Of a stretch of DNA of 64,000 bases, positions 7,491 to 59,969 are shown piece by piece. The number at the start of each line of letters is the position of its first letter. The stretch's first letter is position 1. Location of the stretch: contig JBLDXI010000020.1 of the NCBI GenBank assembly GCA_047495785.1, positions 3,100,001 to 3,164,000 of the forward strand, given 5' to 3'. The translations under genes and the position numbers were made by a program. This DNA comes from Lepidodermella squamata (Eukaryota > Animalia > Gastrotricha). The notes beneath the pieces are model-generated. The model had not been told where the DNA came from. It saw only the letters and a program-made list of their open reading frames with translations, and did not search any database.

Positions 7491-8109
7491 AACACTGGGG
7501 TGAGGGGGAGCCACCGTCCCCTCCAACGACGTGGAGGGGATCTCCAAGGGGTGGTTCGAGTCCTTACCCATTACCCAGGAGAGTGGAGAAAAAGAAAGAA
7601 AAGGCTAGCGCAGCGTAAGCCTTGTCGAACTCTCCTGGATGGGGGCGCGACTCTGGGAGTTCCGAAGGAACGCCAGTTCCTTTACACGTGTTTTACACAT
7701 ACGCCGTAGATTACCACGAACGAAGTGAGATTTCATCCCAACAGGGGGGCCCGAGAACGCGTTGGTTAACAGGACATTCTCCGATGAAGCCGCCCGATTT
7801 ATGGTAGTATCCTGGACCCCTCAGGACCTCCCAGAAACTTTTTCAGCTCTAACGGACCTTCCGTTGATTTTCTAGAAATTAGGACGGTTTTTTCCTATTT
7901 TACCGTATTTTTTGGTCACGTGACCCGGAATGGGTAGTATATGAGGGGACAGTAGGAGGATATGATAAGGACACCAAAAAACTAACCACGCTAACCAGAG
8001 TATCCAAGCCAGCTGACAGGCTGGCCCCTCGCCCCTGGGGGAGAGGGGCCTACAATAAATCAACAATGCTAGCTGGCGACCAAAGAGCAAACGACGAAAA
8101 GGCAATATA
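7491..8109 (+). repeat. Module M copy 1: ~620-bp GC-rich, hairpin-rich direct repeat
   Basis: Runs aacactggggtgaggggg...ggcaatata. Recurs at 22490, 24953, 30619 and 59351 in the same orientation. Confidence 0.9.
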
Positions 8110-8464
8110 CGTAAAAGTCAAGGTCAATTGAACAATTCTGCGGCGAATAAATTGTGCATTTTCCATATACAACAATAGGTTTACATGTAATCGACAACGG
8201 AGAATCCGAATATGACGTTCATTTTGTTATGAAGCAATTATAACCCAATGATAGCCCCTCCAACTAATTTTTCTGTTCACTGCTATGGAGTTGGCATGGT
8301 TATATTTTTTATTAAATAACATAATGCAGTTCAAGTTTCAGGGCTCGAAGTTTTAAAGCACATTTTTAAGTGAGCGGTTCAATAACGCACTGTCTTATTT
8401 CCATATTCATATGCATGCGCAGAAACAAAAAAAAATAATAATAACAATAAAAAATTAAAAGAAA

Positions 8465-8543
8465 ATGTGTCGCGGCCGGGACTCGAACCCTCCATTAACT
8501 GCATTTCACAACGTTACACTGAAACCACTCGGCCACAACACAT
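8465..8543 (-). other. tRNA-like / SINE-head-like element with Pol III A and B boxes
   Basis: Minus strand reads GTGTTGTGGCCGAGTGG (A box) ... GGGTTCGAGTCCCGGCCGCGACAC (B box). The ends pair and are followed by TTTT. No convincing anticodon arm. Confidence 0.5.
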
Positions 8544-9274
8544 CTGACATATCCATCGCAAATTAAATTTCAATTAAATATTCAACGAAATTATCAAAAC
8601 AGTTTCCAGCGCCTTCCGGGAATCGGACGCGTCTCTATATAATTTATTCACTATATAATTCGCTACGCAGTGGTTCGGAAGGCAGTGGTTCGATTGCTGC
8701 TCACATCACATTTTTCCTTCTCATTTTTTCTTCTTAAAATCAGATTTATTTCTGTTTAATTTTTTTGCAGAGTGAGCAATAAAAAATAAACGTTTACCAT
8801 TCACGTGAATCTTCATGAGTACAAAGTGCATGCCTGTCATATGGCCGACACGCGATTCAGCATCAGCTGTTTCACGGCGCAGCGGCGGCAACAGCAAGCA
8901 GACGGTTCGATCCGGTATTCAACCATCATTCACAACGATTTATTTCTCTTCAAAACAACCTCTATTTCCCTAATCATTAGAATTACTTATGCTGCCAGCT
9001 CCTATCAATCTATCTTCCGCTCGAATCGATAACATTGTGACAATGTTGCTCTCTCAGGTTTGCTAGTATATTATTCCCAGTTCATATCACCATTCCCACT
9101 ATAATTACAGCTACTGGATGAAATGGCGATTTCAACACTGTTGTCCACTTTGGTTTTCCATGGTCACTACTCCCTACCAGAAAGCGGTGAGTACATTATT
9201 TTCCTCATTCATTTTTTTTACTATTGTAAAATTTATTGATTTTTTCATTCATTAACACGTTTTTTTTGCTCCCC

Positions 9275-11217
9275 AATATTTTCTTTCGTCGTTATGCTCC
9301 CGTATTCGACGTTTTCGCCATCAGCAACGTCGATTCCACTAATTCATGTCATTTAATTTTACCCTGATTTACTTTTTTCAAGAATTTTTTCAAACTTTGA
9401 AATTCCAAACCAAGGTCGTAGGTTGGTGCCCGACCTCTCATTTTTTCGCCCTCAAATATTTTCTTTCATCGATATGCTCCCGTTCTCGACGTTTTCGCCA
9501 TCAGCAACGTCGATTCCACTAATTCATGTCAATTAATTTTACCCTGATTTACTTTTTTCAAGAATTTTTTCAAACTTTGAAATTCCAAACCAAGGTCGTA
9601 GGTTGGTGCCCGACCTCTCATTTTTTCGCCCTCAAATATTTTCTTTCATCGATATGCTCCCGTTCTCGACGTTTTCGCCATCAGCAACGTCGATTCCACT
9701 AATTCATGTCAATTAATTTTACCCTGATTTACTTTTTTCAAGAATTTTTTCAAACTTTGAAATTCCAAACCAAGGTCGTAGGTTGGTGCCCGACCTCTCA
9801 TTTTTTCGCCCTCAAATATTTTCTTTCATCGATATGCTCCCGTTCTCGACGTTTTCGCCATCAGCAACGTCGATTCCACTAATTCATGTCAATTAATTTT
9901 ACCCTGATTTACTTTTTTCAAGAATTTTTTCAAACTTTGAAATTCCAAACCAAGGTCGTAGGTTGGTGCCCGACCTCTCATTTTTTCGCCCTCAAATATT
10001 TTCTTTCATCGATATGCTCCCGTTCTCGACGTTTTCGCCATCAGCAACGTCGATTCCACTAATTCATGTCAATTAATTTTACCCTGATTTACTTTTTTCA
10101 AGAATTTTTTCTAACTTTGAAATTCCAAACCAAGGTCGTAGGTTGGTGCCCGACCTCTCATTTTTTCGCCCTCAAATATTTTCTTTCATCGATATGCTCC
10201 CGTTCTCGACGTTTTCGCCATCAGCAACGTCGATTCCACTAATTCATGTCAATTAATTTTACCCTGATTTACTTTTTTCAAGAATTTTTTCAAACTTTGA
10301 AATTCCAAACCAAGGTCGTAGGTTGGTGCCCGACCTCTCATTTTTTCGCCCTCAAATATTTTCTTTCATCGATATGCTCCCGTTCTCGACGTTTTCGCCA
10401 TCAGCAACGTCGATTCCACTAATTCATGTCAATTAATTTTACCCTGATTAACTTTTTTCAAGAATTTTTTCAAACTTTGAAATCCCAAACCAAGGTCGTA
10501 GGTTGGTGCCCGACCTCTCATTTTTTCGCCCTCAAATATTTTCTTTCATCGATATGCTCCCGTTCTCGACGTTTTCGCCATCAGCAACGTCGATTCCACT
10601 AATTCATGTCAATTAATTTTACCCTGATTTACTTTTTTCAAGAATTTTTTCAAACTTTGAAATTCCAAACCAAGGTCGTAGGTTGGTGCCCGACCTCTCA
10701 TTTTTTCGCCCTCAAATATTTTCTTTCATCGATATGCTCCCGTTCTCGACGTTTTCGCCATCAGCAACGTCGATTCCACTAATTCATGTAAATTAATTCT
10801 ACCCTGATTTACTTTTTTCAAGAATTTTTTCAAACTTTGAAATCCCAAACCAAGGTCGTAGGTTGGTGCCCGACCTCTCATTTTTTCGCCCTCAAATATT
10901 TTCTTTCATCGATATGCTCCCGTTCTCGACGTTTTCGCCATCAGCAACGTCGATTCCACTAATTCATGTCAATTAATTTTACCCTGATTTACTTTTTTCA
11001 AGAATTTTTTCAAACTTTGAAATCCCAAACCAAGGTCGTAGGTTGGTGCCCGACCTCTCATTTTTTCGCCCTCAAATATTTTCTTTCATCGATATGCTCC
11101 CGTTCTCGAAGTTTTCGCCATCAGCAACGTCGATTCCACTAATTCATGTCAATTAATTTTACCCTGATTTACTTTTTTCAAGAATTTTTTCAAACTTTGA
11201 AATTCCAAACGAAGGTC
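9275..11217. repeat. 180-bp tandem satellite, ~10.8 near-identical units
   Basis: Exact 180-bp period (units at 9301, 9481 ... 11101) with only scattered substitutions. Confidence 0.97.
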
Positions 11218-11917
11218 ATTTTTTTGAATTTTAGAATTTCGGAAATTTATATTAGCATTTCATTTTTTTTTATTTTTTCTCTTTTTTACCAGTTTGCGAA
11301 TCGAATGACCGATGTTGCACATGCTGTAATCAAATGGCTGAAAACGATTTCAAGACGAAGTGATTTGTGATTTTTCAAACGTGCTACTTCATTTGAACGT
11401 TGTTTACCAGCTTTGCTGTATGATGCTTTTTAAATTATATTGTTCCAAACCCCATTTTCGCTGACCCAGGCAGTAATAGGGTAGAGATGCCGTCTCAATG
11501 CCCGGCTATGCAGTTAAATAGCCAACCGACGTTGGAATAGTCGGTATAAACTTCCACCGTCCCGGCTCAGACGGCGAAAACGACCACGTCTTGGTGAGAC
11601 GGTAAAAAAAACTCCGACAAGGCAAGGTCGGTAAAAAACTTCCAAAATGTCCGCAGGGCTGAGCGACCAGCGCCCTCACTGTGATTCGTCACAAATACTA
11701 AGCTGGAAGGGAACCTATGACGATCTGTCAGGCATCTTCGGATCCGAGGTTTCTCCCCGATATTTCAATTATTGATGTGCATTGGTAATTTCAATAAAAT
11801 ATGTTTTTCATTTCAATATATTTTTTTTAATTGATGTTCTTCATTCCATTCGCATATGGTGTTATTTTTTATTTATCTAGTTTTATGATGACAATTTTGT
11901 GATTATGAACTGGAATC

Positions 11918-14900
11918 ATGGTGAAACCGCCTAATTGGAAGCCAAAATCGAAGGGATCGCGTAAGTGTTCCTTTTGCAAACGGAAAGGTGTTCGAATCTC
12001 AACCCACTGCGGACTACTCAATTGCTCTAAAGCTAAAGGGCAACACCATCCCAAGCCGTGCATTAAGGTTCAACCTCCACAGTCCGCTTCTCAGTCCAAT
12101 TGTATGTTTTCCTAATCAATCAGTTATATATGTTTCATCTGTTTTTACACAGCCACGTCGTGTTCGCATGTTGGCGAATCTTTATCGGTAGCTCCATCCT
12201 CACTCACTGTTCAGAATACGTCTCAGCAGTCGTTGATATCTCAAGGCTTGTTCTTGTTATTCATCCTCAAATTGTATAAATTTGCGATAAAATTTCCCCA
12301 TAGGTAGCGGCGCTGTTCTGACTGCTTCGGAGCAATTGTTGGATTCTCAAGGTCAGTAATTTTTATTTCTCAACTATAACTTGACATGTGGCTGTGCCGT
12401 TCCAGCTGTTCCGGCTACCCGGGAAGATCCGCTGCCACCTCCGGGTTAGTTGTTAGATTGAGATTTATTTCATGTCTTGAGCGAATACCACTAAGCTCTT
12501 TTAAGAATTATAAGAATTGAAGAGGTGTTAACATATGATTGTTATGTCATTTAGTCTTGTCAAATAATATTTTCAGGCGCTTCTTTGAACGAACGGCAGG
12601 AATCTAGCGCGCCTGCAACACGTCAGCCAGTAACTCAGCCATCTTGTCCAGTATGCGGCGCAAAAGGCAGGAAGTATCTGACCCACTGCGACAATGAGGA
12701 ATGCCGGATTAGTGGCCGCGGGCATCACGCTAATCCCTGTTTCCAGTTGGAACGACCCGGGCTACAGGCCGGTGTAAATCTTGAGCAGCAACGTAAGTAT
12801 TATCCACCGGGTAACAACCTTTCATAAATAATGATTCATTTAGCTGTGGCGTCCTCTGGAGCTGTTGCTGCTACGTCACAACGGTCGCTGCCATCTATAG
12901 GTTAGTTATTTAATCAAGAATTGTGCTGCCTGGTGTTAACTAAAACTGCTGTTTGTTGCAGCTAGTGGTGGTTCTTCTAATGCACCTATTCTATGTGACA
13001 ACTGCAGAAGACGATCGGTGCCCTTTTTCGACATCGACATTGCTGTCGTGGAAGAGCCGGTATCTGGACGCAGCTATGGTGCTCTAGGACTAAGGAAAGT
13101 CTATGAAAACTGCTCGTTATGCCGTTGTTGCCGTCACTATTTGCGCAACGGCGATGCTCGTTTTCCCGCCGGATGGCCAGCCCTTGTTTATAGCCTTTTC
13201 TTCAAAGCAGCGAATAGGCACCTAGCAGAGGCCCTCTCTAACTACATATCGCCGCTCATGAAAATGATGTGGAGCGAGGTCGACGGCTCAAATGTTATGC
13301 GGGACTCGCAGCCGTGTTTCGTTGACAAGACACGTGATCTGGCTGATTTCATGGCCAATATCTACAAAGACGCAGGTATTCTATCAACCTACTAAATGAG
13401 TATACGAATGCAGTTTTTTTTTTAATTGCAGGAGGATTCAGTTACGCGCTAAACATGTACCCAGTGCCCGACGTGATATGTCCGCAAGGTTGCCTCGCTT
13501 TCATGGAGAAGTGCCAGCTAATCCCGTACCATCATTTGATCCAACATGTCACTGGCAGCAATTTCTTCGATTCCGACTTGCGCTGGTTCGAGTCAAGGAG
13601 ACCCGACTGGCCGTGCAACCCAGTGCCTTTCCTCGCTTGGGATTTCGCTGCTGCAATGGTCATGGACGAGACAAAGGGCCTATGCATCCTTGCCTGCATT
13701 GACCACAGCAAGCCGGACCTGTTTTCCATGTACCTGCATCTCCCTGCGAATCCCGAGTTCGACCGGTTCCACGATCCGCAGCAGACCGAAATCTATGCAC
13801 CCGTGCACGTGCAGCCCAATTTCGTCAGAGGCGGGCGAGTCGGTCAGTCGAACGCATCAGTGCCAGTGACAAAAACTCTGGGTGATCAATTAGGTGTCGG
13901 CAGCTTTACATTGCGTGGTGCTCACTCGGCAAATCGCAAGGCTTTGAGCATGTACGCCAGCGCCTTTAAGCCACACCTTTTGGCCTTGCGATATCGTCCT
14001 GAGATTCGCAACACCGCGATCAGCAGATTTGGCGAGGAACACGTGGCTCACGTTCTTGCTGATTTTGATCAGCATTGCCCAACTGCTGTCGTGAGAAACC
14101 ATGTCAAGGGTGGCACTTTCATCGAGCTAGCTGACTGTTACTTCACCTGGGCTATTCGCCGCAAAATCGCGACAGGTCAGTACATTTCATTCTTAATCTA
14201 CTACTATAGATTAGACTCAACAGAATTAGCACTGCATTAATTTTGCTGATAGTGATAGCCTTGTAATCGGGCCCTGCACTGAATTTTAGATGCGTTTTGT
14301 CCAATATAAAATTCTCCAATATAAATGGTCAAAGAACGGATGTAGCAACTGTAGTAGAGTATCGCGCGGGATAACCACTGCAAATTATTATGTAGTGTAC
14401 TTCGGGAGGATAAGATTAGGCCGATCGAACTGCTCCAAATTCTCGATATAATAAACAAATATAGAGATACTAAGATTCAAGCGCATTAACAATTCATCAT
14501 CGATTCCTACGAATTGTCTCATTTCGTCCTTCTTTATTTTAGGAAGTGATTCGTCGAAAAAAGGGAAAACACCTTCAGAAGCCGTGATCTTCAATCCGGT
14601 TCACCCGAACGATGATCATGGCTTAATCCCCTGGGCGTTCAAGTCGGGTCAAGGCGACAACCCTAGTCAGCTCCTGACACTGGTTGCCAACGTCGTTTCG
14701 TTGTGCCGCCCTGTGTACCGTGCGGCGTTGAGTCATCTAGTGCTTGGCAGTCCCGATTTAACACGCGTCGACATCGGTGACTTGCTCAGTCATACTGTTT
14801 CGCTGCCGCGCCCGAAAACCCCTCGTACTCTGAATTTGTCGCATCTGGCAAGGGACTTCTGGTCACTGACAGAACCCGAAAGTGATAGCGGATCTGACGA

Positions 14901-17900
14901 TGACGAAGAATCCCCCGATGTCGTTACGCGGGCATTAACTTTGATTGGGAGAGTTACTGCGCCGATTAATGATGTCGAGTTGTCGTTTGCTGGATCTCAT
15001 CTTTTAGCGATAAGAAAGGGGCAAACCATGGACGGCGAAAGAAGGAGTCTCCGAAGTCATGGTGAGTGTTTTATTCATATTTTGGCAATTATTGCTGCAT
15101 TATTAGACGTTGTGGTGATACATATCATGATCTTGGGTCCTGAATTTCAAAATTTACTGGTTTTAATCAAAAATTGAAACAACAAAAAATTGAGGGCTCC
15201 CATTCAAGTTATAATGACGTAAATCTTGAAATATTGAGTAATTTTCAAATCGTTTGATTCATACCTAGATAACCCTTGTTTATTTCGTGTTGACAGTGGG
15301 TAGGGTGCTGGTCATCCACGGAGGTCAATCTCAGCTGCTGACCGAATACCAGACTTCGCATGAGCTGCTGATGTGCCGACCCGAAGGTGCCTTGCCGATC
15401 AATTGGCCCGCATTGCCCTTGTCGCTGAAAGCTGGTCATCACCTGCTACTTGCCCGCGTCAAGTTTGGCTCGAAATCCTACATCGTTTTTCGATGGTCGC
15501 CTAGCTTCAGTGGCTGGTGGACAGTAGAGCCTAGCGGGCGAGTGGTTCGTGGTGTCAGTGATCAGCACATGCGCTCTGACGTCCAATTTGCGATTTACGC
15601 TCTGCCTGGCAACCAGACGTTCTGCAATCAAGCCGTCCGTCAATCGCTCGGTGGTCAAAGCAAGGCTGCCTGCGAAATGCATTTCGACTCTGTCGAGTTC
15701 AACTTCACTCTTATGAAAGTGCCGGTGAAACATAAGGTGAAGTGTTGCATGCGATCACCGGGAAGAGCCAATCAATGCGGCAAACCTGCTCAGTTGCGCT
15801 GTCCTGCGGGCTTGCAGAATGGCAGCTTGTCGTGCAGTGTCGGCATCTGCACGCGGTGCTTCAAGAAGCTTCCAGCGGACGGTATCACCAAGCTCTCAGC
15901 GCCTGACTTTCTGCCTGATGTGCCTGAAGATGCTGAATTGCAACTGTCAGCTAGCAGGGCATCGAACTTGGAAGCTCAAGCCGACGAGGTTCCGCCGCAG
16001 CCTGAGCAGCTTCATTTGGCTACTGATATTCAATTTCCTCGAGGCGATGCTGAGCCGCTGTATGATCCGACCAAGGGTATTCTCGCCAAGTATCTCTGGC
16101 AGCACTTGGGAATTCTGCAGCGAACCAGGCTCGCTTTCGATTCTGCCCAGAAGTCTTTTCTACTGCAGCAGATGGTTGCCTTCGGAGATGCCCCTGCTAC
16201 TTCCATCTTGTACCCGGAGGGTGCTCTGTTTCCGTCACTTTTCTATTGCCAACGTGATGGCAGTGTTGTTGGTGCTTTGCCTCACCATCACTACTCGTCC
16301 TACAACTCCGACTATACAGGTGGAATCGGCTCCCTGTCTGATCATGTCAAAGTCAGGTTGCGCAACTTCTTCTTGGCAACAAGCTGGTCGTTTGCGTCAA
16401 TCTACTTCTCCTTTGACATGAAGCTATCGGCGCAGCTGAACAAAAACAGCACTGCAATCTTCATGAAGCGTGGGACAGAAGGCCTGGCAGGTAAAGGCGC
16501 TGTTGGCTGGTCTCCTCCTGGCACGGCTCTCGAATACGAGGAGTTCGACAAGGAGTCGAGGCTGAAAGAGCTTGGCGCCCTAATCAAGCATGAAGAATGG
16601 AAGTGGTTCGGGACAATTACTTGTAATGATACAGGTTAGCACAAGTTTTGGTATTCAATCTCACTCAATTGTAGACTGAATAATTTCTCCAAGAATTGTT
16701 TGAAATTTGAAATTTTACCACCTCGACCTACACAATGCATTATTTTTCAATTCCAGGCACACCTGGTGTATGTGAAATCGTCAAAGCCCTTATGATAAAC
16801 GCTCAAAGGCACCATGGTCCACGCCCTGTTCTGTCGAAGGCCGACTATCAGCGAACTTTTCGTCAGCGTCTGCTCCTTGTTTCAAGGCTTGACGAGACCG
16901 AGTACAAGCGGCTGTACTACGCCCATTTCATCCTCATCAGCATGGCTTGGCAACGAGTGCAGGAGCATCTGATCGAGTTCCTGAAGCGCACGAATGTTGT
17001 TGGCACTGTCACCACTATTTTCGTCAGGAACGAATTTCAGAGCGAATCACTCGTTGGCAACAAAAGTCATCTGCATATGGGCATTTCAGTACGCGAAAGC
17101 CGGGCAGAACTGCTGGAGAAAGTTTGCTGTGATCCTCGTGAATTCTTCTCGGAGCGGTACGGCACGTCATTCGACGAGCTTCAGCGCTTGAGGTTGGTCG
17201 AGAGCCGAGATCACTTCGAGCTGCTCAAGGAGGTCCATTACCCCTTCCAACGTCACGAATGCGAGAAAGCGTTTTGGAAATGTCAAGTTCCACGCGGCGA
17301 AGGAGGGGAAATGGTTTGCCGAGTTCGCCAGCACGGCGTCTCCAGCAGCGGCTATTTCGAAGAATTCCGCAACGTGTACTCCGAGGATACCCTGAAAGAG
17401 CTGCAATCCCTAGACCTCGCCAGAGAAGTGCCCAATCCCACTGGCGACTTTGACTGGGAATTTCTGGCTGATCAGCTCAAGTCGGGCGTGTACCACTACG
17501 CGATCAAGCATCTCGAGAAGGGCGTGAAGTTCATTCCGCAAATCCCGATCATCGCGGCAATGATGGGCGGCTCCACGAACTTTCAGATATGCGATTCTCA
17601 TTTCAGCGTATCTTACCTGACGAGCTACGTTGCCAGCTCCGACGCTCGCCCTGAAGCTTACGCTGCAACGACAGATGTTCCGGGCCAAGTCGTTGCTTTG
17701 TTCCCTGCTGGTTTTGAGCGAGGTCAAAAGCTTGCTAGTGTTCGGTGAGTAATATCTTTGCACTTCAATTGACTTGAAAAACTTTGATGTTTTTAGGAAA
17801 GTGATGGAAGCGAAGCTGAAGCATTTCCGTCGAGAAAGCATGCAGAGCTTTATCTTCATCGCCTTGACAGAAGTTGCTTGGTTCGCGTTGGGGTTTCCCT

Positions 17901-41088: not shown

Positions 41089-41098
41089 GAAATTCACT

Positions 41099-47955: not shown

Positions 47956-48009
47956 ACGTTGGCACGTTTGCAATATTTGTAAATTCGCCAATATCTAACT
48001 TAATACTAA

Positions 48010-48750: not shown

Positions 48751-48771
48751 AATTTCTAGTTTGATAATAAA

Positions 48772-49083: not shown

Positions 49084-49096
49084 TTATATTGATAAA

Positions 49097-50476: not shown

Positions 50477-50501
50477 AAAGAAAATCTAGTCTTCCAATAA
50501 A

Positions 50502-51556: not shown

Positions 51557-51569
51557 TTAGAATGTAAGA

Positions 51570-51701: not shown

Positions 51702-51732
51702 AGCTTTGTTACTGTTATTAGGTAAGTTGCTA

Positions 51733-52227
51733 ATGGAAAGAAAAATGACTGATGAAGAGCTTTTCGATTTGCATTACAAAATCGATAGAAGTGGGTCATA
51801 TGAAAACCTTGCACACAAATATATGACTTGCGAAGTTTGCAACATTGATCTATTTCCTGATTATCATGAAAATTTCAATATTTGTACGTCTTGCGGCCGA
51901 TGCTATCCTTATTGTAATCCTGAAGGTAGCACCAGGTTTTCGCCGCCTTACAAAAGGGCGTGGCATATCATGTCTGTTATCAGAAAGCATGACTTACACA
52001 TTAATGGTAATGAGCAAGACAAAATCATGAATTTATACAAAGAATTAGATAGACTATATTTCAAGAAATTTCCAAAGAAAAATATGATACATATACTATT
52101 TGTGTTACAATATATGTGTAAAAAATTAGGCTTTGTACATATAGCCCAAAGAATCAAGATTATAAAAAATGAAAAACTTTTGAAAAAATGGGACGATAAA
52201 TTAAATCTAGTATTTAACCAAGAATGA
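51733..52227 (+). CDS. VLTF3-like (poxvirus late transcription factor 3 family) zinc-ribbon protein
   Basis: CEVC...ICTSCG followed by YKRAWH, KKNMIHILFVL and KLLKKWD, matching the VLTF3 pattern. Confidence 0.65.
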   Translation: MERKMTDEELFDLHYKIDRSGSYENLAHKYMTCEVCNIDLFPDYHENFNICTSCGRCYPYCNPEGSTRFSPPYKRAWHIMSVIRKHDLHINGNEQDKIMNLYKELDRLYFKKFPKKNMIHILFVLQYMCKKLGFVHIAQRIKIIKNEKLLKKWDDKLNLVFNQE

Positions 52228-52958
52228 AAAGCTCCGTAATTTTTATCCCTAAAGAATGGAATGAACATAGCAAAAATAAAGGAAACGATAAATATATACG
52301 AAGTGATGGATCAGTGCCATTTGATGGAAATGTAAATATGAATAATAAAAGGATAGAGAATGTTGGCGACCCTGTGCATAATAGCGATGCAGTTAATCTG
52401 AAAGCTTTCGTGACAGAACGTGAGAAATTTATAAAGGGCTGTGAAGATAAACTAACATCACATGTTTCGACTTACAATACGTTCAAAGCCAAAGTTGAAC
52501 AGGATATGACGAAAATATCCGGTTTAAATCGGGAAAATATGTCTCTTTTTATGTCTGGGCATAATAGCATTGAAAATAAGAAATTCCTAGCATTTAATAT
52601 TTTACATTCTACTCATATGTCAATCGATAGCAGTGGTGCTTTTTCAGAGGGAGACGACGAAGGAGATGCGATTTTACCTGGTTCAGTGGCAATTAAGGAA
52701 CCCCTTTTTGCCCGCATACAGCTGTGGATAGCCGTAAATGGAGAAAGCACCTCAATCGCGATCAGCCTAGTGAAGAATGAGCATCAAGTTTTGGGGAATA
52801 AATACTCCACATATAATCAGCTCGGAGAAACACGTTTAGAACACTTGGAAATGATTGAAAACTTTGATAGAGGTGATAAATTTCAGGTTTTATTGACAAC
52901 CAAGTCTAAAATAACTTGTAAATTTTATCTAAGAATTTCTAGTTTATTATATAAATGA
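52224..52958 (+). CDS. Putative fiber/adhesin-like protein (244 aa)
   Basis: DGSVPFDGNVNMNNKRIENVGDP...DAVN repeat motif, then a coiled coil and a beta-rich C-terminal head. Confidence 0.5.
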   Translation: MKSSVIFIPKEWNEHSKNKGNDKYIRSDGSVPFDGNVNMNNKRIENVGDPVHNSDAVNLKAFVTEREKFIKGCEDKLTSHVSTYNTFKAKVEQDMTKISGLNRENMSLFMSGHNSIENKKFLAFNILHSTHMSIDSSGAFSEGDDEGDAILPGSVAIKEPLFARIQLWIAVNGESTSIAISLVKNEHQVLGNKYSTYNQLGETRLEHLEMIENFDRGDKFQVLLTTKSKITCKFYLRISSLLYK

Positions 52959-53563
52959 CCGAGCATAATATTTATCCAACAGCCCCTAAATTGGAAACGC
53001 GTTTAGAAACAAACAGTACTCAGGAATTTAGGATTAGTGAAATTAAAAAACTAAAAGAAGTAATGAAAAACGAGATTGATTTTCGCCTTAAATGCTACGA
53101 TAAGTATAAGAGATCAGCTAATGCACTTAATGGTGTTAATATCGGCCTGTCATCGATGTCAATTGGACTTGGCGTAGGAGGAATAGGGCTGCTAACAACT
53201 ATAATAAGCACTCCTATAGTTATTGTTTTAGAAGCTATTTCTATCGGATCTGGACTTGTTAGTATTGGGTTTGGTATTGGTGCTAAGCAGCTCATGAAAA
53301 AGGCTGAAAAGCATGAGAGATTGTGCATGCTAGCTATAAGCAAGCTGAACTCGATAAATGATCTAATATCGAAAGCACTGAATGACAATTTCATTAGTGA
53401 TAGTGAGTATAAAATCATAACTAAAGAATATGAAAAATACTTAGAGATGAAGTCTCCGATTAAAAAAGATTTAGATAGTAAATCTTCTGTTAGTGATAAA
53501 GAAATAAAAAAGGAGTTCATAAAAAAGATCCAAGAATTACAATTAGATGTAAAAAGTCGATAA
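52955..53563 (+). CDS. Two-TM membrane protein typical of Polintons (202 aa), N-terminal YPTAP
   Basis: Gly-rich hydrophobic hairpin; KHE...A.SKLNSI.DLISKAL.D..I...E segment. Confidence 0.7.
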   Translation: MTEHNIYPTAPKLETRLETNSTQEFRISEIKKLKEVMKNEIDFRLKCYDKYKRSANALNGVNIGLSSMSIGLGVGGIGLLTTIISTPIVIVLEAISIGSGLVSIGFGIGAKQLMKKAEKHERLCMLAISKLNSINDLISKALNDNFISDSEYKIITKEYEKYLEMKSPIKKDLDSKSSVSDKEIKKEFIKKIQELQLDVKSR

Positions 53564-53854
53564 TTCATTTGAATATTCATACGGCCGAACAGGATAGCCG
53601 AAATTTAACTTTGGGCTTGGCACCTTTCTCGAATTCTGAGAATCTGCCACCTTATTCACCCTAATAATTGTTGGCTTCTTAGCTGAATACTCCTTACGTA
53701 ATTTCAGTCCAACGTAGCCACTAATAATCACCAAAAAGATTACACATGTATACATAACTATCGTTTTCATTTCCAAATTGTTGATGTGGGCAGCTTTAAC
53801 AATTTCCTTGGTATGCCTTAACATCTCTTCCATGTAACTACAGGAATCGTGCAT
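53543..53854 (-). CDS. Single-pass membrane hypothetical protein (103 aa)
   Basis: Hydrophobic stretch IVMYTCVIFLVIISGYVGL. Confidence 0.45.
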   Translation of the reverse strand: MHDSCSYMEEMLRHTKEIVKAAHINNLEMKTIVMYTCVIFLVIISGYVGLKLRKEYSAKKPTIIRVNKVADSQNSRKVPSPKLNFGYPVRPYEYSNELSTFYI

Positions 53855-53866
53855 TTTTATTTTTTA

Positions 53867-54232
53867 CTATATACTCTCCCTGAGATTTTTCATTTCAGTG
53901 AGAAATTCTTTGATTTCGAGCTTTGCTTTCTCTTTCCTCTCTTTCTGACTTACTTTTCTAATTTCAGCCTGTTTTTCTTGTTGCTGCTTAGTAGTTAAGA
54001 AGCTGTTATAAAGAGACTCAAACTTAATCTTCTCTTTTTCCATGTCTAACAATTTTCGCTCAATGTCTTTCGCCGATCCTTTTTTCATCTTTTCGAGTTC
54101 CCTGTACTGTTTACTTAACGTTTTGAATCCTACGGAAATATCCTTAATTTCTTGTTTTAACTGCTCTTGGATGCTTTCATTATCATCCAACATTTCATCC
54201 ACTTCTGTCAGCGCTATGAATGTACCTGGCAT
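53867..54232 (-). CDS. Coiled-coil hypothetical protein (121 aa)
   Basis: Paralog of 54317-54598; E/K-rich. Confidence 0.55.
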   Translation of the reverse strand: MPGTFIALTEVDEMLDDNESIQEQLKQEIKDISVGFKTLSKQYRELEKMKKGSAKDIERKLLDMEKEKIKFESLYNSFLTTKQQQEKQAEIRKVSQKERKEKAKLEIKEFLTEMKNLRESI

Positions 54233-54316
54233 GTCTATATTAGTAGTCGAGAAATTTATTTTCGCTTTCTTCTCGCCTGAACTTTATTCATCGGCAAAAT
54301 TTTTAGTGGATATTGA

Positions 54317-54598
54317 TTATTTTCTAATTTCAGCCTGTTTTTCTTGTTGCTGATTAGCAGTTAAGAGGCTGCTATAAAGAGACTCGAACTTAATCTTCTC
54401 TTTTTCCATGTCTAACAATTTTCGCTCAATTTCTTTCTCCGATCCTTTTTTCATCTTTTCGAGTTCCCTGTACTGTTTACTTAACGTTTTGTATCCTACG
54501 GAAATATCCTTAATTTCTTGTTTACACCGCTCTAGGATGCTTTCATAATCTTCCATCATTTCAATCACTTCTGTCAGCGCTACGAATGTATCTGGCAT
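54317..54598 (-). CDS. Coiled-coil hypothetical protein, shorter tandem paralog (93 aa)
   Basis: Tandem duplication at a 366-bp offset with diverged sequence. Confidence 0.5.
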   Translation of the reverse strand: MPDTFVALTEVIEMMEDYESILERCKQEIKDISVGYKTLSKQYRELEKMKKGSEKEIERKLLDMEKEKIKFESLYSSLLTANQQQEKQAEIRK

Positions 54599-54621
54599 GT
54601 CTATATAAGTTGTGGAGAAAT

Positions 54622-54918
54622 TTATTTTCGCTTTCTTCTCGCCTGAACCTCATTCATTGACATAATTTTTACTGGATACTGATTATTCTCTTCCGGGGGT
54701 AGTAAATTCACCTTAATATTGCCTCCATGCTGATGTTTATAGCCGGAGTTTTCTCTAAATTCTTGATTCGAGCCTAGCCATTTCTGTAAATTATAATATA
54801 TCATCCCTTTGCTCACGTTGAATTTCGCCGCAATTTGTAATACAGGAGTTTTGCCTTTAAAATATTCTTCAATAATTTTGGCTTTAGTTTCTGTGCTTAT
54901 TTGTTTCGTTCTCAACAT
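54622..54918 (-). CDS. Helix-turn-helix DNA-binding protein (98 aa)
   Basis: STETKAKIIEEY..GKTPVLQIAAKFNVSKGMIYYNLQKW HTH pattern. Confidence 0.65.
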   Translation of the reverse strand: MLRTKQISTETKAKIIEEYFKGKTPVLQIAAKFNVSKGMIYYNLQKWLGSNQEFRENSGYKHQHGGNIKVNLLPPEENNQYPVKIMSMNEVQARRKRK

Positions 54919-54944
54919 ACTTACCTTATATACAGAAATTTTTT

Positions 54945-55755
54945 TAAAGTTTGAAAGTCTGAACGTTTAAACGTTTGAACTTCGCAGGCGTTGGCATGTG
55001 CCCTTTTACAAGCATATTTACACGTTTGAACGGTTGAAAGCTTGAACGTTTGAACGTTTGAAAGCTTGAATGTTTGAACGTTCGAATTATCAGTGTAAAT
55101 TGTCAGATCAGCATGATATCGGTCGAACAGCCCAACTCGGCGATTACAGTTTCGAATCATCGGCCGACTTTGCGGATTAAAATCGCCTGCGGCTAACCTC
55201 GATTGCGGCTAAAAATTGTGACCGAATTTATTTTTCAAATTTGCCCGGGTTTTATGAATTATCAGCTGATTTTGTGTATAACAGCTAAACTTGAGAAACA
55301 AGTTACAAATTTATTATTCTGAAAATTCCGAAGATGTCGCATACAAATCGCCTGCGGCTAACCTTGGGTTAATTATGACCGAATTTACTTTTCATCGCAT
55401 TTTTTGGCGTTGACAGAGCAGACATTACATCATCTTATAAGCTGCTATTCGCATTCGTAGACATAGATCATATGAATCGGTAGGCTCTGCTGAAACTCCT
55501 AGACCTTAGGAAAATTTGGTTGTCAAATCTCTCACAACGCTGGACACTGAAAATTGTTGAACCTTCGTTTGAAATCTGAACGTTCAAACGTTCGAACTTC
55601 ATAGGCGTTGGCATGTACCCTTTTACCAGCATATTTACACGTTTGAACGGTTGAAAGCTTGAATGTTTGAACGTTCGAATTATCAGTGTAAGTTTGAAGA
55701 TTAGATCTTTGTCAGATCAGGGTATTTAGCAAGATATCGGTCGAACAGCCCAACA
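54945..55755. repeat. TTGAACGTT-rich short repeats; the block at ~54945-55135 is duplicated at ~55570-55755
   Basis: gaacgtttgaa and gaaagcttgaa iterations; ggcgttggcatgt..cccttttac occurs twice. Confidence 0.75.
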
Positions 55756-56009
55756 CATTCACGCTTACTGTTTCGAATTCAGTGAATCATCAGCCGTCTT
55801 CACGAATGAAAATCGCATGCGGCCAACCTTGGGTTTATTGTGACCGAATTTTTAATTCCTTAATTCTTGGCTTCAGCATAGTCAGTTACATGAAGCGCGA
55901 GAGTAACTCTCTGAATGTAATGAACGATACAGTCGAGCTAGCCAACGTGACTTTCCGTCCACAAGTGCCGGCTAAACCTCTGCGCGACGAGATTGGAGAT
56001 CGGACGTAC

Positions 56010-56720
56010 GCCGAAATCGCGATTTCTGATACCGATTTCGACACGATCAACGCCGAATTTTTACAGTGGCCGTTGATAGTTTGTACAGAATTTCAAGGGC
56101 TATCTAATGATATAAAATTTACAGAACGGCGATACTGGGTTTCGACTGAAAATTGATTTGTCAGCCAAATTGATTTGTCATCTAGGCCAAAATCGCGATT
56201 TCTGAGGCCGATTTCGACCCGATCGTTGCCGAATTTGTACAGCGGCTGTTGGCAGCTTGTACAGAAGTTCAAGGGCTATCTAATGATATAAAAATTATAG
56301 AGTGACGATACTTGATTCGCCTTGAAATTGCGATCAAAATCAGTTGATTTAGCATGCCAGCAATGCCAAAAAAGATATTTCTAGAGCCGATTTGTACCAT
56401 ATCGACGCTGAATTTTTACAGCGGCCGTTGTTAGTTTATATAGAATTTCAAGGGCTATCTAAAGGTATAAAATTCATGGAACGGTGATACTGGTTTCCGG
56501 CTAAAATAGCGATCTAAGTCGGTCAAATTGGCGTTCCGCCACAGCCAAAATCGTGATTTCCGAAGCCGATTTCGACATAATCGGCGGCGTTCTTGTTCAG
56601 CGGGCGCTGTTAGTTTGTACAGAATTTCAAGGGCTATCTAGTGATATAAAATTTATAGAACGGTGATACTGGGTTCGCCTGGAAATTGCAAGAAAAGTCG
56701 GTCAAATTGGTGTGCTAAAT
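56010..56720. repeat. Degenerate ~178-bp tandem repeat, 4 copies
   Basis: caagggctatcta..gatataaaatt anchors near 56095, 56270, 56449 and 56628. Confidence 0.8.
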
Positions 56721-57153
56721 CTAAACGCCATTTTTAATTTTTTATTGCCTGATTCCCAGAGATGTTGACTCTGTCTGCTTTGAACTATTGCCTAGCACGC
56801 GCTCAAGACTTCGTCAAATTTTTTAATTGTTTCCGTTCATTCTCAGGACGGTACTGGATACATTTGAAGATTTACCATTGCGCTCAAAAGTGCAACTTGG
56901 GCGTGGACCCGTAGGCTGTAGGTGCTCATAGATAAATTCACTGAAGTTTAGTGCTTTCCGACCGAGTGTAGTATCTTTGGAGATTTACCATGAATACGGT
57001 GTCCAAATGCATTGAGCTCTATGGTAGTGCTCTATGGAGCTCCATGGATTCTACGGAAAAAACTCACAGTGAATGCAAGTGCGGTAATTTTTAAGGAGGC
57101 TGAAAGCATTCGCTATTATAATTTCAGCATTTCACATTTCACATTTCACTAAG

Positions 57154-57718
57154 ATGAATAGCTCTCTCTGCGTGTCATTGCTTTTAATAATGGCCATCGC
57201 ATCAACCATTGCGATCAGCTGCTACGATAACCAAAAGGACAGCACATCACCACCCTCGGTTTTTGTTGGATGTCGTGCATGTTATGTAATTTTAGCCATT
57301 ATTTCAAATCAAACCAAGTCTATAAATGAATTTTTTATAGCTTCTAGCCTACAGCGCTCAACGTGGGTCAATGACCTACAACCATTCTTGCATCAGAAAT
57401 GCAGAAGTACCATGCAATACTCAAACCTCGGCTGCAGCATATTCCGGAACAGTTACCACGTCCTGTGTATGCTGTAGTGATTGGTGCAATTATAAGGCCT
57501 CTCCGTGCTATTTTACCGTAGACTCCCCTGTTATGCTCTACCTTAATACCAGCGGAGCATGGCAGGGGGCATTCGGCTCTAATACCGCAAATTCATATGA
57601 CGTATCAACTTCGGCCACCATAATCTCATCTACGAAGCGTAATTTCTCCCCTTTACCCTCCTCGAGTCATAATATTCTGATCCTAGGACTTGGTTTGGCC
57701 TTCACGTCTGGCCTATAA
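57154..57718 (+). CDS. Secreted/GPI-type Ly6-uPAR (three-finger, Quiver-like) protein, ~169 aa, 2 exons
   Basis: Exons 57154-57285 and 57341-57718 join in frame. Signal peptide, ISCY...C..CY...C...C...CVCCSDWCN, S/T-rich stalk, hydrophobic C-terminus. AATAAA near 57789. Confidence 0.72.
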
Positions 57719-57920
57719 AAAAATTCAGGCCAATGAATACCGCCACATGCCTTATTGAAAAAAAATGTACACTTAAATATTACTTTGAATAAACGAAAAA
57801 ACGTTTTAAGCCACTGCGGATTTTTTAATGTCGCAATGAATAGACATTCTCTGTAAGAAGGTTCAATGAGTTATTTTTGCCTTTCACAATGCCGAGTGCC
57901 AAATGATGAAAATCCATTGA

Positions 57921-58205
57921 GCAGGACGTCCTATCCGGAGTAAATTTCATTTCTAGGTGGTGTTCTGAAAACCACCCCTTTTCAGGCTGTTCTCAAAATT
58001 TTAAGATCGGAAAATTCGGACGACCGCTGAAACTCAATTTAATTTGAGCTGGATATGTCTAGGCGGCGATTTTGACTCTTTGGTGATGATTTTTGCATTT
58101 CGCATAGCCCATGCGAAAAGCCGAAGATTTGCCGCGGAGAATATGATAAAAGATGAAAATTTTATTTTGAGGTGGCTGGCCCAGCTTCGGCCGATTCCTA
58201 CTGCT
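57921..58205 (-). repeat. Right TIR of the Polinton
   Basis: Reverse complement of 33773-34057. Confidence 0.93.
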
Positions 58206-59180
58206 TTCATGTCATTCAATTGTTACCCCGATTAATTTTTACAACAAACCTATCGAAACTTCGAAACTTAACTTAAATTATATTATCCAACCTTCATGTT
58301 TTGTTATTTGCGTTCTCGTCATCAGTGTCATCGATTCTCCCAATTCATGTCATTCAGTTGTTACCCCGATTAATTTTTACAACAACCTCTCGAAACTTCG
58401 AAACTTTAGCTCAAACCTTCTTGTTTTGTTCTTTTTGCGTTCTCGTCATCAGTGACATGGATTCTACCAATTCATGTCATTCAATTGTTACCCTGATTGT
58501 TTTTTTACAACAAACTCTCGAAACTTCGAAACTTCAAAACATGGTCGTGGGTTCGAACCAGATTTCTCCTTTTTCTACTCATCAATTTGTTCTTTAACCT
58601 TCACGCATTCGTTGTTGGCGTTTTCGTCATCAGCTACATCGATTCTACCAATTCATGTCATTCAATAGTTCTTTTGTTTGTTTTTCACAACAAAGTCTCA
58701 CTTCAAAACATGGTCGTGGTTTCGAATCCGATCTCTGGTCGTTCCGCTCTCAAATTTTATTCTTCAACCTTCCTGTTTTGTTATGTGCGTACTCGTCATC
58801 AGTGACATTGATTCTCCCAATTCATGTCATTCAGTTGTTACCCCGATTAATTTTTACAACAACCTCTCGAAACTTCGAAACTTTAGCTCAAACCTTCTTG
58901 TTTTGTTCTTTTTGCGTTCTCGTCATCAGTGACATGGATTCTACCAATTCATGTCATTCAATTGTTACCCTGATTGTTTTTTTACAACAAACTCTCGAAA
59001 CTTCGAAACTTCAAAACATGGTCGTGGGTTCGAACCAGATCTCTCCTTTTTCTACTCATCAATTTGTTCTTCAACCTGCACGCATTCGTTGTTGGCGTTT
59101 TCGTCATCAGCTACATCGATTCTACCAATTCATGTCATTCAATTGTTAACTCGATTTTACAACATCTTCTCGAAATTTTA
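58206..59180. repeat. Degenerate satellite (continuation of the Polinton target), with a 477-bp-offset internal duplication
   Basis: ORFs 58474 and 58951 are near-identical; the region matches 24440-24780. Confidence 0.8.
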
Positions 59181-59350
59181 TGAAAGCGAATAAATGTTCA
59201 ACTACTCTTTAACGTGCATTCTTCTCTAAATATTTCCAAGCCATTCAAAAATACGTTGGACGGTTCCTGAGCGAACCCGAAATTACTACTTATCTATAAA
59301 CACCTAATCAGGAGAACATTCAAATTTACAATTCAATTTCATGTTTCATC

Positions 59351-59969
59351 AACATTGGGGTGAGGGGGAAGCACCGTCCCCTCCAACGACGTGGAGGGGA
59401 TCTCGTAGGGGTGGTTCGAGTCCGTACCCATTACCCAGGAGAGTAGAGAAAAAGAAAGAAAAGGCTAGCGCAGCGTAAGCCTTGTCGAACTCTCCTGGAT
59501 GGGGGCGCGACTCTGGGAGTTCCGAAGGAACGCCAGTTCCTTTACACGTGTTTTACACATACGCCGTAGATTACCACGAACGAAGTGAGATTTCATCCCA
59601 ACAGGGGGGCCCGAGAACGCGTTGGTTAACAGGACATTCTCCGATGAAGCCGCCCGATTTATGGTAGTATCCTGGACCCCTCAGGACCTCCCAGAAACTT
59701 TTTCAGCTCTAACGGACCTTCCGTTGATTTTCTAGAAATTAGGACGGTTTTTTCCTATTTTACCGTATTTTTTGGTCACGTGACCCGGAATGGGTAGTAT
59801 ATGAGGGGACAGTAGGAGGATATGATAAGGACACCAAAAAACTAACCACGCTAACCAGAGTATCCAAGCCAGCTGACAGGCTGGCCCCTCGCCCCTGGGG
59901 GAGAGGGGCCTACAATAAATCAACAATGCTAGCTGGCGACCAAAGAGCAAACGACGAAAAGGCAATATA
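59351..59969 (+). repeat. Module M copy 5 (5' part like copy 3, 3' part like copy 1)
   Basis: gaagcacc/tctcgtagggg alleles of copy 3, then identical to copy 1 downstream (offset 51860). Confidence 0.9.

What the first reader, a model, noticed from the sequence alone, without database searches (positions are those of the whole stretch)
7491..59969. One ~620-bp module (M) is the hub of a head-to-tail array of autonomous and non-autonomous units
Seen: five co-oriented M copies (7491, 22490, 24953, 30619, 59351) define units of 15.0 kb (coding), ~2.5 kb, ~5.7 kb and ~4.3 kb (after removing the Polinton), then another coding unit. Flanks are exchanged across M: M1 and M2 share an upstream flank, M3 and M5 share an upstream flank, M1 and M5 share a downstream flank, M2 and M4 share a downstream flank. 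M5 is a chimera of M3 and M1. Inference: M holds the nick/origin-terminator site, so circles or concatemers integrate into existing M copies and build self-targeted arrays. This differs from dispersed TC...CTRR Helitron insertion.
Basis: partly seen in the sequence, partly recalled or inferred. Interest (0 to 1): 0.82.

Follow-up and report, generated by a model that had tools for sequence, protein, structure and literature searches.

The report
Head-to-tail array of rolling-circle transposons
Five copies of one 640-bp module are the tail-to-head joints between six Helitron-like rolling-circle transposon units lined up in one direction, and the way the joints are mixed shows that whole units entered existing joints by recombination; this is a clear example of a known habit of these elements, in a little-described branch of the family.

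Summary
Five co-oriented copies of a ~640-bp module (M) separate six units: three 15.0-kb gene-bearing units (99.0-99.7% alike), two short units of one family (B) and a third short unit (X). One B unit holds a 24.4-kb Polinton-like insertion with 300-bp inverted ends and a 6-bp target duplication.

The 15-kb unit encodes a divergent Helitron-type Rep-helicase. Its HUH and two-tyrosine motifs are conserved and the helicase is PIF1-like. Helraiser is the only solved-structure match.

M is best read as the 3' end region of one unit joined to the 5' end region of the next. That alone explains the "exchanged flanks".

- M3 and M4 are reciprocal hybrids of a B-type and an X-type joint. Both switch within the same 14 bases, just after a 17-nt motif.
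- M2 and M5 switch on either side of a 32-nt variable patch.

This fits circular or tandem copies integrating into resident joints. It does not fit one fixed nick site.

A distant relative from another organism sits in a similar array and shares the 17-nt motif.

Helitron tandem arrays and satellite-carrying non-autonomous partners are already known, so this is a new variant of a known kind. Exact ends, autonomy and host remain unknown.

The parts
1..7475 (+). 3' part of gene-bearing unit A0, cut by the window edge. It holds a partial Rep-helicase gene copy at about 1-5954, treated as one part.
   Evidence: 99.0% identical to 15000-22474. Seven of the nine coding blocks are present.
7476..8114 (+). 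M1, the joint between two A units. Segment types are A / a / A / A.
   Evidence: Alignment A1.
7575..7638 (+). Nested stem-loop in M1: a perfect 10-nt inverted pair (7575-7584 and 7629-7638) enclosing a 23-nt palindrome (7601-7623). The same structure is present in every M.
   Evidence: The ssDNA fold has z = -2.75, with 2 of 200 shuffles folding as well.
7732..7760 (+). Variable patch V of M1 (alignment columns 360-391). It exists in three unrelated forms: a in M1, M2 and M5; c in M3; d in M4.
7841..7857 (+). 17-nt motif conserved in all five M copies. The other copies are at 22834-22850, 25306-25322, 30973-30989 and 59701-59717. It is also found in the joints of the array of a distant relative (L002).
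8115..22474 (+). Body of gene-bearing unit A1. The unit period is 14,999 bp.
9261..11217 (+). 180-bp satellite array, 10.9 copies at 98% identity, in the 5' part of unit A1.
12994..21692 (+). Rep-helicase gene of unit A1. Nine colinear coding blocks span 12994-20953 (about 2,130 aa): an N-terminal region, Rep at 16759-17745 and helicase at 18075-20480. A weak GIY-YIG-like tail follows at 21217-21692.
22475..23107 (+). M2, the joint between A1 and short unit B1. Segment types are A / a / B / B; the switch lies in columns 391-409.
23108..24937 (+). Body of short unit B1 (unit about 2.46 kb). It has no long ORF and ends in satellite monomers (24438-24780).
24938..25579 (+). M3, the joint between B1 and X. 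Segment types are C / c / B / X-type; the switch lies in 25323-25336.
25580..30603 (+). Body of short unit X (unit about 5.67 kb). It holds dispersed satellite monomers, 126-bp repeats at 29547-30008 and a 371-bp palindrome at 28058-28428.
30604..31246 (+). M4, the joint between X and B2. Segment types are D / d / Bd / B; the switch lies in 30990-31003.
31247..33772 (+). Left part of the body of short unit B2. It has 0 mismatches to B1 over 30993-32574.
33773..58205 (.). Nested Polinton/Maverick-like element, 24,433 bp. It has 300-bp inverted ends (91.7% identical) and a 6-bp target duplication (33767-33772 and 58206-58211) inside a satellite monomer. It carries an integrase ORF at 41471-42937 (-), an A32-like ATPase ORF at 46112-46813 (+) and a 1,413-aa ORF at 36731-40972 (-).
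58206..59335 (+). Right part of the body of unit B2, made of satellite monomers. It has 1 mismatch to B1 over 58928-59498.
59336..59974 (+). M5, the joint between B2 and A2. Segment types are C / a / A / A; the switch lies in columns 185-360.
59975..64000 (+). 5' part of gene-bearing unit A2, with a 180-bp satellite of 11.9 copies at 61121-63257. It is cut by the window edge.

Best explanation
The window is a head-to-tail array of rolling-circle (Helitron-like) transposon units, in the order A, A, B, X, B, A. A is a 15-kb unit that carries a Rep-helicase gene of a divergent branch whose relatives often end in a GIY-YIG nuclease. B and X are gene-less partners made mostly of 126-180-bp satellite monomers between the same end regions. 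M is not a separate module. It is the 3' end region of one unit (about 260 bp, with a nested stem-loop) joined to the 5' end region of the next (250-500 bp), around a 32-nt variable patch and a conserved 17-nt motif. Shown: the repeats, their orientation, the Rep-helicase identity, the segment mosaic, the nested Polinton-like insertion and a comparable array in a distant relative. Inferred: the array grew by nested integration of circular or tandem copies, each carrying its own tail-head joint, into a resident joint by recombination inside M. X entered a B|B joint by one reciprocal exchange just after the 17-nt motif. B, as a dimer or in two steps, entered an A|A joint, with the variable patch converted to the resident form on both sides. 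The Polinton-like element then inserted into a satellite monomer of one B unit.
For: Repeats and flanks.
Rep-helicase identity:
- A whole-library HMMER search gave 123 relatives, many of 1.5-2.8 kaa. Several reach the Pfam cut-offs for PIF1 and Helitron_like_N, and most have a C-terminal GIY-YIG domain.
- The gene is colinear with these relatives over nine blocks.
- The HUH motif and both tyrosines are conserved.
- Helraiser is the only solved-structure match by profile and the top fold match at probability 0.93.
End-region reading of M:
- In columns 97-213 the copies group by the unit on their left. From column 409 they group by the unit on their right.
- The inverted pair plus palindrome has the geometry published for Helentron-type ends that abut (PMC4067079, PMC7492417).
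- Satellite monomers are co-oriented in every unit.
Reciprocal exchange:
- M2 and M4 differ at 65 sites in columns 97-488 and at none in columns 489-745, nor over the next 1.58 kb.
- M2 and M3 differ at no site in columns 392-502 and at 25 sites in columns 503-745.
- Two independent end points would share one marker-free interval with probability 0.04.
- The form of the variable patch carried at the inferred B|B joint is absent from both outer joints. That joint therefore did not arise by unequal exchange between them.
Relative: locus L002 has 11 co-oriented copies of one module at about 1.3-kb spacing, with a 12.1-kb gene-bearing unit among them. Four of its joints carry the same 17-nt motif.
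Literature: tandem Helitron arrays, circles with joined ends and satellite-carrying partners are known (PMC4067079, PMC5148889, PMC7492417, PMC11934779).
Against: - There are only five joints and no solo end in the window, so the exact ends are not defined. Two candidates compete: about 7623-7628, from the geometry of the stem-loop, and 7857/7858, from the exchange interval.
- The outer pair M2/M5 does not show a clean reciprocal exchange and needs an added conversion of the variable patch.
- Gene conversion between array members could mimic integration.
- The Pfam marker reported for the Helentron-type group (DUF6570) is absent from the window's ORFs and from eight relatives.
- Five other relatives' loci show no bracketing repeats, though their flanks are short or untidy.
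- The gene lies in nine blocks with changing frames and four stops inside blocks, so activity is unproven.
- The zero-mismatch tracts between the two B units could in principle come from the assembly.
Confidence: 0.6

Rival explanations
1. Site-specific self-targeting. The Rep protein nicks one defined site in M, both in the incoming circle and in the resident copy, and joins the strands. Every unit is therefore inserted at exactly the same base of M.
For: The X event has both switches inside 14 bases (25323-25336 and 30990-31003). These lie directly after a 17-nt motif that is conserved in a relative with about 30% protein identity. The interval starts in the loop of a small hairpin present in every copy, and HUH nucleases often cut in such loops (general knowledge).
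Against: The outer joints switch elsewhere: M2 in columns 391-409 and M5 in columns 185-360. One fixed site therefore cannot explain all joints without extra conversion events. The small hairpin is not better than shuffled sequence (z -0.4 to -2.1). No nicking is shown.
Confidence: 0.2
2. There is no transposition in the making of the array. A tandem repeat block evolves by unequal crossing-over, segmental duplication and gene conversion, as a satellite does. M is simply the longest shared homology where exchanges resolve.
For: The A units are 99.0-99.7% alike and differ by one satellite monomer. The B units carry zero-mismatch tracts next to stretches that are 14% diverged, which is typical of conversion. 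The switch points lie at several positions.
Against: A single unequal exchange creates one hybrid joint, not a reciprocal pair flanking an inserted unit. The form of the variable patch at the inferred B|B joint is absent from the outer joints. Unit X differs from the B joint by about 13% on both sides of M, as expected of a separate element family rather than a local duplicate.
Confidence: 0.15
3. An assembly artefact has created or reordered the units.
For: There are 100% identical tracts of 1.58 kb between the B units. There are also 100% identical 0.7-1.1-kb tandem pieces inside the nested element.
Against: The copies of A differ by 0.3-1%. All five joints differ from one another. The nested element has a clean 6-bp target duplication. 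The mosaic is internally coherent.
Confidence: 0.05

Closest known systems
Tandem (head-to-tail) arrays of Helitrons in plants, bats, silkworm, Metarhizium and Hydractinia (PMC4067079, PMC5148889, PMC11934779, which cite Xiong et al. 2016)
   Same: Co-oriented units abut end to end. The literature explains them by rolling-circle concatemers, by bypass of the terminator, or by insertion next to or into the end of another copy.
   Different: Here the array mixes three families: one gene-bearing and two gene-less. The joints carry a readable reciprocal exchange. The protein belongs to a divergent branch, and no 5'-TC or CTRR-3' ends are seen.
Helentron/Helitron2 non-autonomous partners with central tandem repeats (HINE, DINE-1, Cg_HINE; PMC4067079, PMC7492417, PMC3627910)
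   Same: The short units have conserved 5' and 3' end regions around co-oriented satellite monomers. An 11-12-nt inverted pair followed by a palindrome sits at the 3' side, and TT is present at the candidate joints.
   Different: Those elements are dispersed insertions with defined solo ends. Here no solo end is available, both arms of the inverted pair lie 54 bases apart inside M, there is no AP-endonuclease domain, and the DUF6570 marker is absent.
Circular Helitron intermediates with joined ends (Helraiser; FoHeli1 in Fusarium, PMC5148889)
   Same: A circle carries one tail-head joint, which is what M looks like. Integration of such a circle into a resident joint gives exactly the paired hybrid joints seen around unit X.
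   Different: No circle has been observed for this family. The exchange points argue for homologous rather than end-specific joining.
IS91/ISCR-type rolling-circle insertion sequences of bacteria (general knowledge)
   Same: An HUH/two-tyrosine enzyme, distinct origin and terminator ends, read-through of the terminator, and tandem or composite products.
   Different: This is a eukaryotic element with a fused PIF1 helicase, long structured end regions and satellites. No sequence relation was tested.

Membership tests
Helitron-like elements (Rep-helicase rolling-circle transposons) | Rep domain with an HUH motif and two catalytic tyrosines | tested here: met
   In the alignment with 14 relatives the H-x-H is present in every sequence that spans the site. 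Y294 and Y298 are conserved in at least 90%. The profile's only solved-structure match is Helraiser, at both motifs. The top fold match is 7lcc, probability 0.93 but TM only 0.35. Pfam Helitron_like_N is reached by four relatives, not by the window's own ORF.
Helitron-like elements (Rep-helicase rolling-circle transposons) | PIF1-family helicase downstream of Rep in the same protein | tested here: met
   A Walker A motif and PIF1/AAA_30 hits lie on 18531-19649. PIF1 helicases and the Helraiser helicase are matched in the PDB. The gene is colinear with full-length relatives.
Helitron-like elements (Rep-helicase rolling-circle transposons) | Insertion without target duplication at A|T or T|T | not testable with these tools
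   There is no solo end or empty site in the window. No other copy was found in the public collections.
Canonical Helitron (HLE1) | 5'-TC start and CTRR-3' end, with a hairpin about 11 bases before the end | tested here: not met
   Neither candidate joint (about 7623-7628 or 7857/7858) has CTRR before it.
Helitron2/Helentron (HLE2) | Short subterminal inverted repeats: the 5' one within 0-4 bases of the start, the 3' one 20-60 bases before the end and followed by a palindrome | tested here: inconclusive
   A perfect 10-nt pair (12 nt with one mismatch) encloses a palindrome in every M, with the spacing expected for abutting ends. The ends themselves are not independently defined, and the one clean exchange lies 230 bases further on.
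Helitron2/Helentron (HLE2) | AP-endonuclease domain (Helentron) or the DUF6570 marker (PMC11417382) | tested here: not met
   Neither is found in the window's ORFs or in eight relatives. Six of the eight relatives scanned carry GIY-YIG instead. The window has only a weak GIY-YIG-like tail, which Pfam does not detect.
Helentron-associated non-autonomous elements with central repeats (HINE-like) | A gene-less unit with conserved end regions around co-oriented tandem repeats | tested here: met
   Units B1, X and B2.
Polinton/Maverick (the nested element) | Long inverted ends, 6-bp target duplication, retroviral-type integrase and packaging ATPase | tested here: met
   300-bp inverted ends; a 6-bp duplication; rve and A32-like hits.
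Polinton/Maverick (the nested element) | Protein-primed B-family DNA polymerase, protease and capsid proteins | tested here: inconclusive
   The 1,413-aa ORF has only an endonuclease VII-like hit and no solved-structure match. Its relatives are unnamed. The other ORFs have no Pfam hit.

The most novel reading that the evidence does not exclude
A branch of Rep-helicase(-GIY-YIG) rolling-circle elements lives mainly as self-built arrays. Circular copies of gene-bearing and gene-less units would enter the tail-head joint of resident copies at or near a conserved 17-nt hairpin motif that acts as a shared attachment and origin site. The family would then grow satellite-like blocks instead of dispersing. 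The same habit and motif in two hosts whose proteins are only about 30% identical would make this a lineage trait.
Probability: 0.25. Interest if true: 0.8.

Novelty: new variant of a known kind. Interest (0 to 1): 0.58.

Why it matters
Tandem Helitron arrays have been explained by concatemers or by insertion next to other copies, mostly without sequence evidence that separates the routes. Here one window preserves paired hybrid joints that read like a record of whole units entering existing joints. This would link circular intermediates, array growth and the birth of satellite DNA in one locus. It also points to a scarcely described Rep-helicase branch, often fused to a GIY-YIG nuclease, that appears in arrays in two distant hosts and may therefore have an unusual way of settling in genomes.

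Tried and rejected
- **M as an RNA gene or ribozyme.** M contains a box-B-like string, a hammerhead-like core lies just upstream of M1/M2, and its reverse complement occurs in the satellite monomers. Rfam at gathering and at permissive thresholds found nothing, and ARAGORN found nothing. The only Rfam hits are sub-threshold microRNA models on a 371-bp palindrome.
- **One fixed junction.** Neither column ~255 nor column 488/489 explains all five joints.
- **The variable patch as a target duplication made on insertion.** This fits M2/M5 but fails for M3/M4, which carry different forms.
- **Origin of the B|B joint by unequal exchange between M2 and M5.** Rejected, because its patch form c is in neither.
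- **Finding the same genome or family elsewhere.** All three attempts were empty: the word search, the exact look-up of a window ORF and the metagenome scan for a 22-mer of M.
- **Using L004 and L005 to find a relative's ends.** They are the same locus at 100% identity.
- **Pfam on the GIY-YIG-like pieces.** Negative.
- **Naming the host from relatives of the nested element's large ORF.** The hits are unnamed. I fetched no DNA of relatives of that virus-like element.
- **A joined (spliced) model of the Rep-helicase gene.** Not built. The blocks were searched one by one by reference.

Full report
**1. Observation**

A self-comparison of the window shows that 1-8270 repeats at 15000-23261 (99.0%). 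It also shows that 7468-11217 repeats at 59330-63077 (99.3%). One 14,999-bp unit is therefore present two and a half times.

Between the second and third copies lie three shorter units. Five co-oriented copies of a ~640-bp module separate all six units (alignment A1; column map):

| Copy | Coordinates |
|---|---|
| M1 | 7476-8114 |
| M2 | 22475-23107 |
| M3 | 24938-25579 |
| M4 | 30604-31246 |
| M5 | 59336-59974 |

M5 is indeed M3-like on the left (0 differences in columns 97-359) and M1-like on the right (1 difference in columns 360-745).

A sensitive search finds no further or reversed copy of M in the window. A 10-nt motif pair specific to M occurs only in these five places.

**2. The nested element**

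33773-58205 is AT-rich and has 300-bp inverted ends that are 91.7% identical. It is flanked by a 6-bp direct duplication (33767-33772 and 58206-58211) that lies inside one satellite monomer.

It encodes:
- an integrase with rve and chromo domains and an N-terminal phospholipase-A2-like domain;
- an A32-like ATPase;
- a VLTF3-like ORF;
- a 1,413-aa ORF with an endonuclease VII-like stretch.

A polymerase, protease or capsid was not identified. I saw no broken gene in it. I fetched no DNA of its relatives.

**3. The gene of the 15-kb unit**

*First searches.* Pfam sees only P-loop/PIF1-type hits on 18531-19649. The PDB sequence search gives PIF1 helicases and the helicase part of Helraiser. The candidate Rep ORF (16735-17748) had no Pfam, PDB or word-search hit. 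I therefore used the whole-library HMMER search.

*Relatives.* That search returned 123 relatives. The best is 34% identical, from the ostracod *Cyprideis torosa*; others come from a tunicate and from unnamed eukaryotic contigs in environmental assemblies. Eight long relatives were scanned. All carry PIF1, four reach the Pfam cut-off for Helitron_like_N, six have a C-terminal GIY-YIG domain and one has OTU.

*Colinearity and motifs.* The window is colinear with these proteins over nine coding blocks between 12994 and 20953, about 2,130 aa. An alignment shows:
- the first Rep motif at the end of ORF 15287-16639;
- the HUH motif;
- a zinc-finger-like insert;
- both tyrosines conserved.

*Structure.* The profile's only solved-structure match is the Helraiser Rep, at both catalytic motifs. 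A model of the ORF (mean pLDDT 71.6) has Helraiser as its top fold match, with probability 0.93 but low TM.

*C-terminal tail.* A weak, colinear GIY-YIG-like tail lies at 21217-21692. Pfam does not confirm it.

*Is the gene intact?* The nine blocks change frame at all eight discontinuities. Four stop codons lie inside blocks as tblastn delimits them, and the count is the same in the second copy. Every discontinuity can locally be bridged by a GT...AG interval of 32-59 bases. The inter-block DNA has lower GC (0.41 against 0.52). This fits short introns.

The relatives I fetched are single uninterrupted ORFs, so relatives do not share such introns, and no tool here predicts introns. I therefore did not build or search a joined model; the blocks were searched apart, by reference. 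Whether the unit is autonomous stays open.

**4. Anatomy of M**

M is not uniform. Variable columns fall into segments:

| Columns | Behaviour |
|---|---|
| 97-213 | Copies group by the unit on their left: {M1, M2}, {M3, M5}, M4 alone |
| 214-359 | Invariant except in M4 |
| 360-391 | A patch (V) in three unrelated forms: a in M1, M2 and M5; c in M3; d in M4 |
| 409 onward | Copies group by the unit on their right: {M1, M5} against {M2, M3, M4} |

So M behaves as a 3' end region of the upstream unit joined to a 5' end region of the downstream unit. Most of the "flank exchange" follows from different units abutting.

The left part holds a perfect 10-nt inverted pair around a 23-nt palindrome (7575-7638; fold z -2.75). 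Small length and base differences in M2 and M4 lie just after the palindrome. This is the geometry published for Helentron-type ends when a 3' end meets a 5' end. There the subterminal repeat lies 2-4 bases from the start and 38-60 bases from the end, and a palindrome lies near the end (PMC4067079; also PMC7492417, PMC3627910).

All units carry related, co-oriented 126-180-bp satellite monomers, as Helentron-type non-autonomous elements do.

Two features do not fit that group. The Pfam marker proposed for it (DUF6570, PMC11417382) and an AP endonuclease are absent. Canonical TC/CTRR ends are not seen either.

**5. The mosaic as a record of events**

*The two B units are nearly identical beyond M.* They have no mismatch over 22854-24435 against 30993-32574, and one mismatch over 24530-25100 against 58928-59498. 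Their first ~390 bases of M, by contrast, differ at 56 aligned positions, or 65 sites counting gap columns.

*The inner pair, M3 and M4.*
- M2 and M4 differ at 65 sites in columns 97-488 and at none from column 489 on.
- M2 and M3 differ at no site in columns 392-502 and at 25 sites from column 503 on.

M3 is therefore B-type on the left and X-type on the right. M4 is X-type on the left and B-type on the right. Both switch inside columns 489-502 (25323-25336 and 30990-31003).

Two independent end points would share a marker-free interval with probability 0.04. The X-type joint implied by the segment labels is about 13% diverged from the B-type joint on both sides, as expected of a separate family. 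I built no sequence for it.

This is the pattern left when a circular unit carrying its own joint integrates into a resident joint by one exchange. Here X entered the joint between two tandem B units.

*The outer pair, M2 and M5.* M2 switches in columns 391-409 and M5 in columns 185-360. Both carry form a of the variable patch, so B entering an A|A joint needs an added conversion of that patch. Form c, carried at the inferred B|B joint, is absent from both outer joints. The B|B joint therefore did not come from unequal exchange between them and looks like a preformed tail-head joint.

*Conclusion.* The switches lie in three different places, which argues against one fixed cutting site as the only process. 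It favours homologous exchange and conversion inside M.

**6. A conserved motif and a second array**

A 17-nt motif occurs once in every M (7841-7857 and its counterparts) and ends exactly where the X exchange interval begins. Its 3' half can pair with the following bases, leaving a 3-base loop, in all copies. That small hairpin is no better than shuffled sequence.

The same motif occurs in locus L002, a 1.1-Mb contig from an ENA assembly that encodes a relative with about 30% identity in Rep. The local alignment score is 6.6 sd above shuffles.

L002 is itself a co-oriented array. One conserved module occurs 11 times on the gene's strand. Six ~1.3-kb units come first, then a 12.1-kb gene-bearing unit, then at least three more short units. 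The locus has direct repeats only. The motif lies in four of its inter-unit joints.

Five other loci gave no such picture, but their flanks are short or untidy.

**7. Comparison with what is known**

- Head-to-tail Helitron arrays are reported in bats, silkworm, maize, rice, *Arabidopsis*, *Metarhizium* and *Hydractinia*. They are attributed to terminator bypass, to concatemers from rolling-circle replication, or to insertion into the end of another copy (PMC4067079, PMC5148889, PMC11934779).
- Circles with joined ends are described for Helraiser and FoHeli1 (PMC5148889).
- Satellite-carrying non-autonomous partners are described in flies, mites and oysters (PMC4067079, PMC7492417).
- A GIY-YIG domain in such an element is mentioned once, as a captured domain (PMC11417382).

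The finding is thus a clear and unusually readable case of a known habit, in a poorly described branch. It is not a new kind of system.

**8. Limits**

- There is no solo end, so the exact ends and the target are unknown.
- Only five joints are available.
- The host is unknown.
- Intactness of the gene is unproven.
- The assembly cannot be checked here.

Noticed in passing
window 42455-46434: Inside the nested element, 0.7-1.1-kb pieces are repeated in tandem four times at 100% identity. This gives three extra 169-aa ORFs (43639-44148, 44422-44931, 45527-46036, minus strand) that copy the N-terminal part of the integrase ORF. It is either a very recent duplication or an assembly effect.
   Followed up: partly
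window 41471-42937 (-): The integrase ORF of the nested element combines a phospholipase-A2-like domain (PF08398, the type known from parvovirus capsid proteins) with rve and chromo domains. This is an unusual combination.
   Followed up: no
window 28058-28428: A 371-bp near-perfect palindrome (91%) lies in unit X. It draws sub-threshold hits to several plant microRNA models in Rfam, which simply reflect a long hairpin.
   Followed up: partly
L002 1-26807: A distant Rep-helicase relative (one 2,268-aa ORF) sits in its own co-oriented array. One module occurs 11 times at about 1.3-kb spacing, with a single 12.1-kb gene-bearing unit. Four joints carry the same 17-nt motif as the window's M.
   Followed up: partly
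relatives P0003, P0004, P0008, P0011, P0017; locus L007: Six of the eight long relatives scanned have a C-terminal GIY-YIG nuclease, and one also has an OTU domain. In L007 the GIY-YIG is a separate overlapping gene call. In the literature I searched this architecture appears only as a 'captured' domain in one moss family.
   Followed up: partly
window 22854-24435 vs 30993-32574; 24530-25100 vs 58928-59498: The two B units have 0 and 1 mismatches over 1.58 and 0.57 kb, while the three A units differ by 0.3-1%. Unit X and the nested element lie between or inside the B units. The last events were therefore very recent, or the tracts are kept identical by conversion.
   Followed up: partly
window 7548-7560 and counterparts in M2-M5: The 3' side of M contains a string like the B box of tRNA genes, next to G-rich stems. 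ARAGORN and Rfam find no tRNA or SINE-like RNA.
   Followed up: yes
window 33767-33772 / 58206-58211: The nested element inserted inside a satellite monomer of unit B2. Its target hexamer occurs in the related monomers too.
   Followed up: partly
window 23285-23361, 23722-23844, 28837-29104, 31424-31500, 31861-31983: Parts of the right end of M and the sequence just beyond it (equivalent to 8042-8270) recur as 80-140-bp fragments, 78-81% identical, inside the bodies of units B and X.
   Followed up: no
window 53945-54691, 56010-56710, 36287-36601: There are further tandem repeats inside the nested element: 366 bp x 2, 179 bp x 3.9 and 115 bp x 2.7.
   Followed up: no
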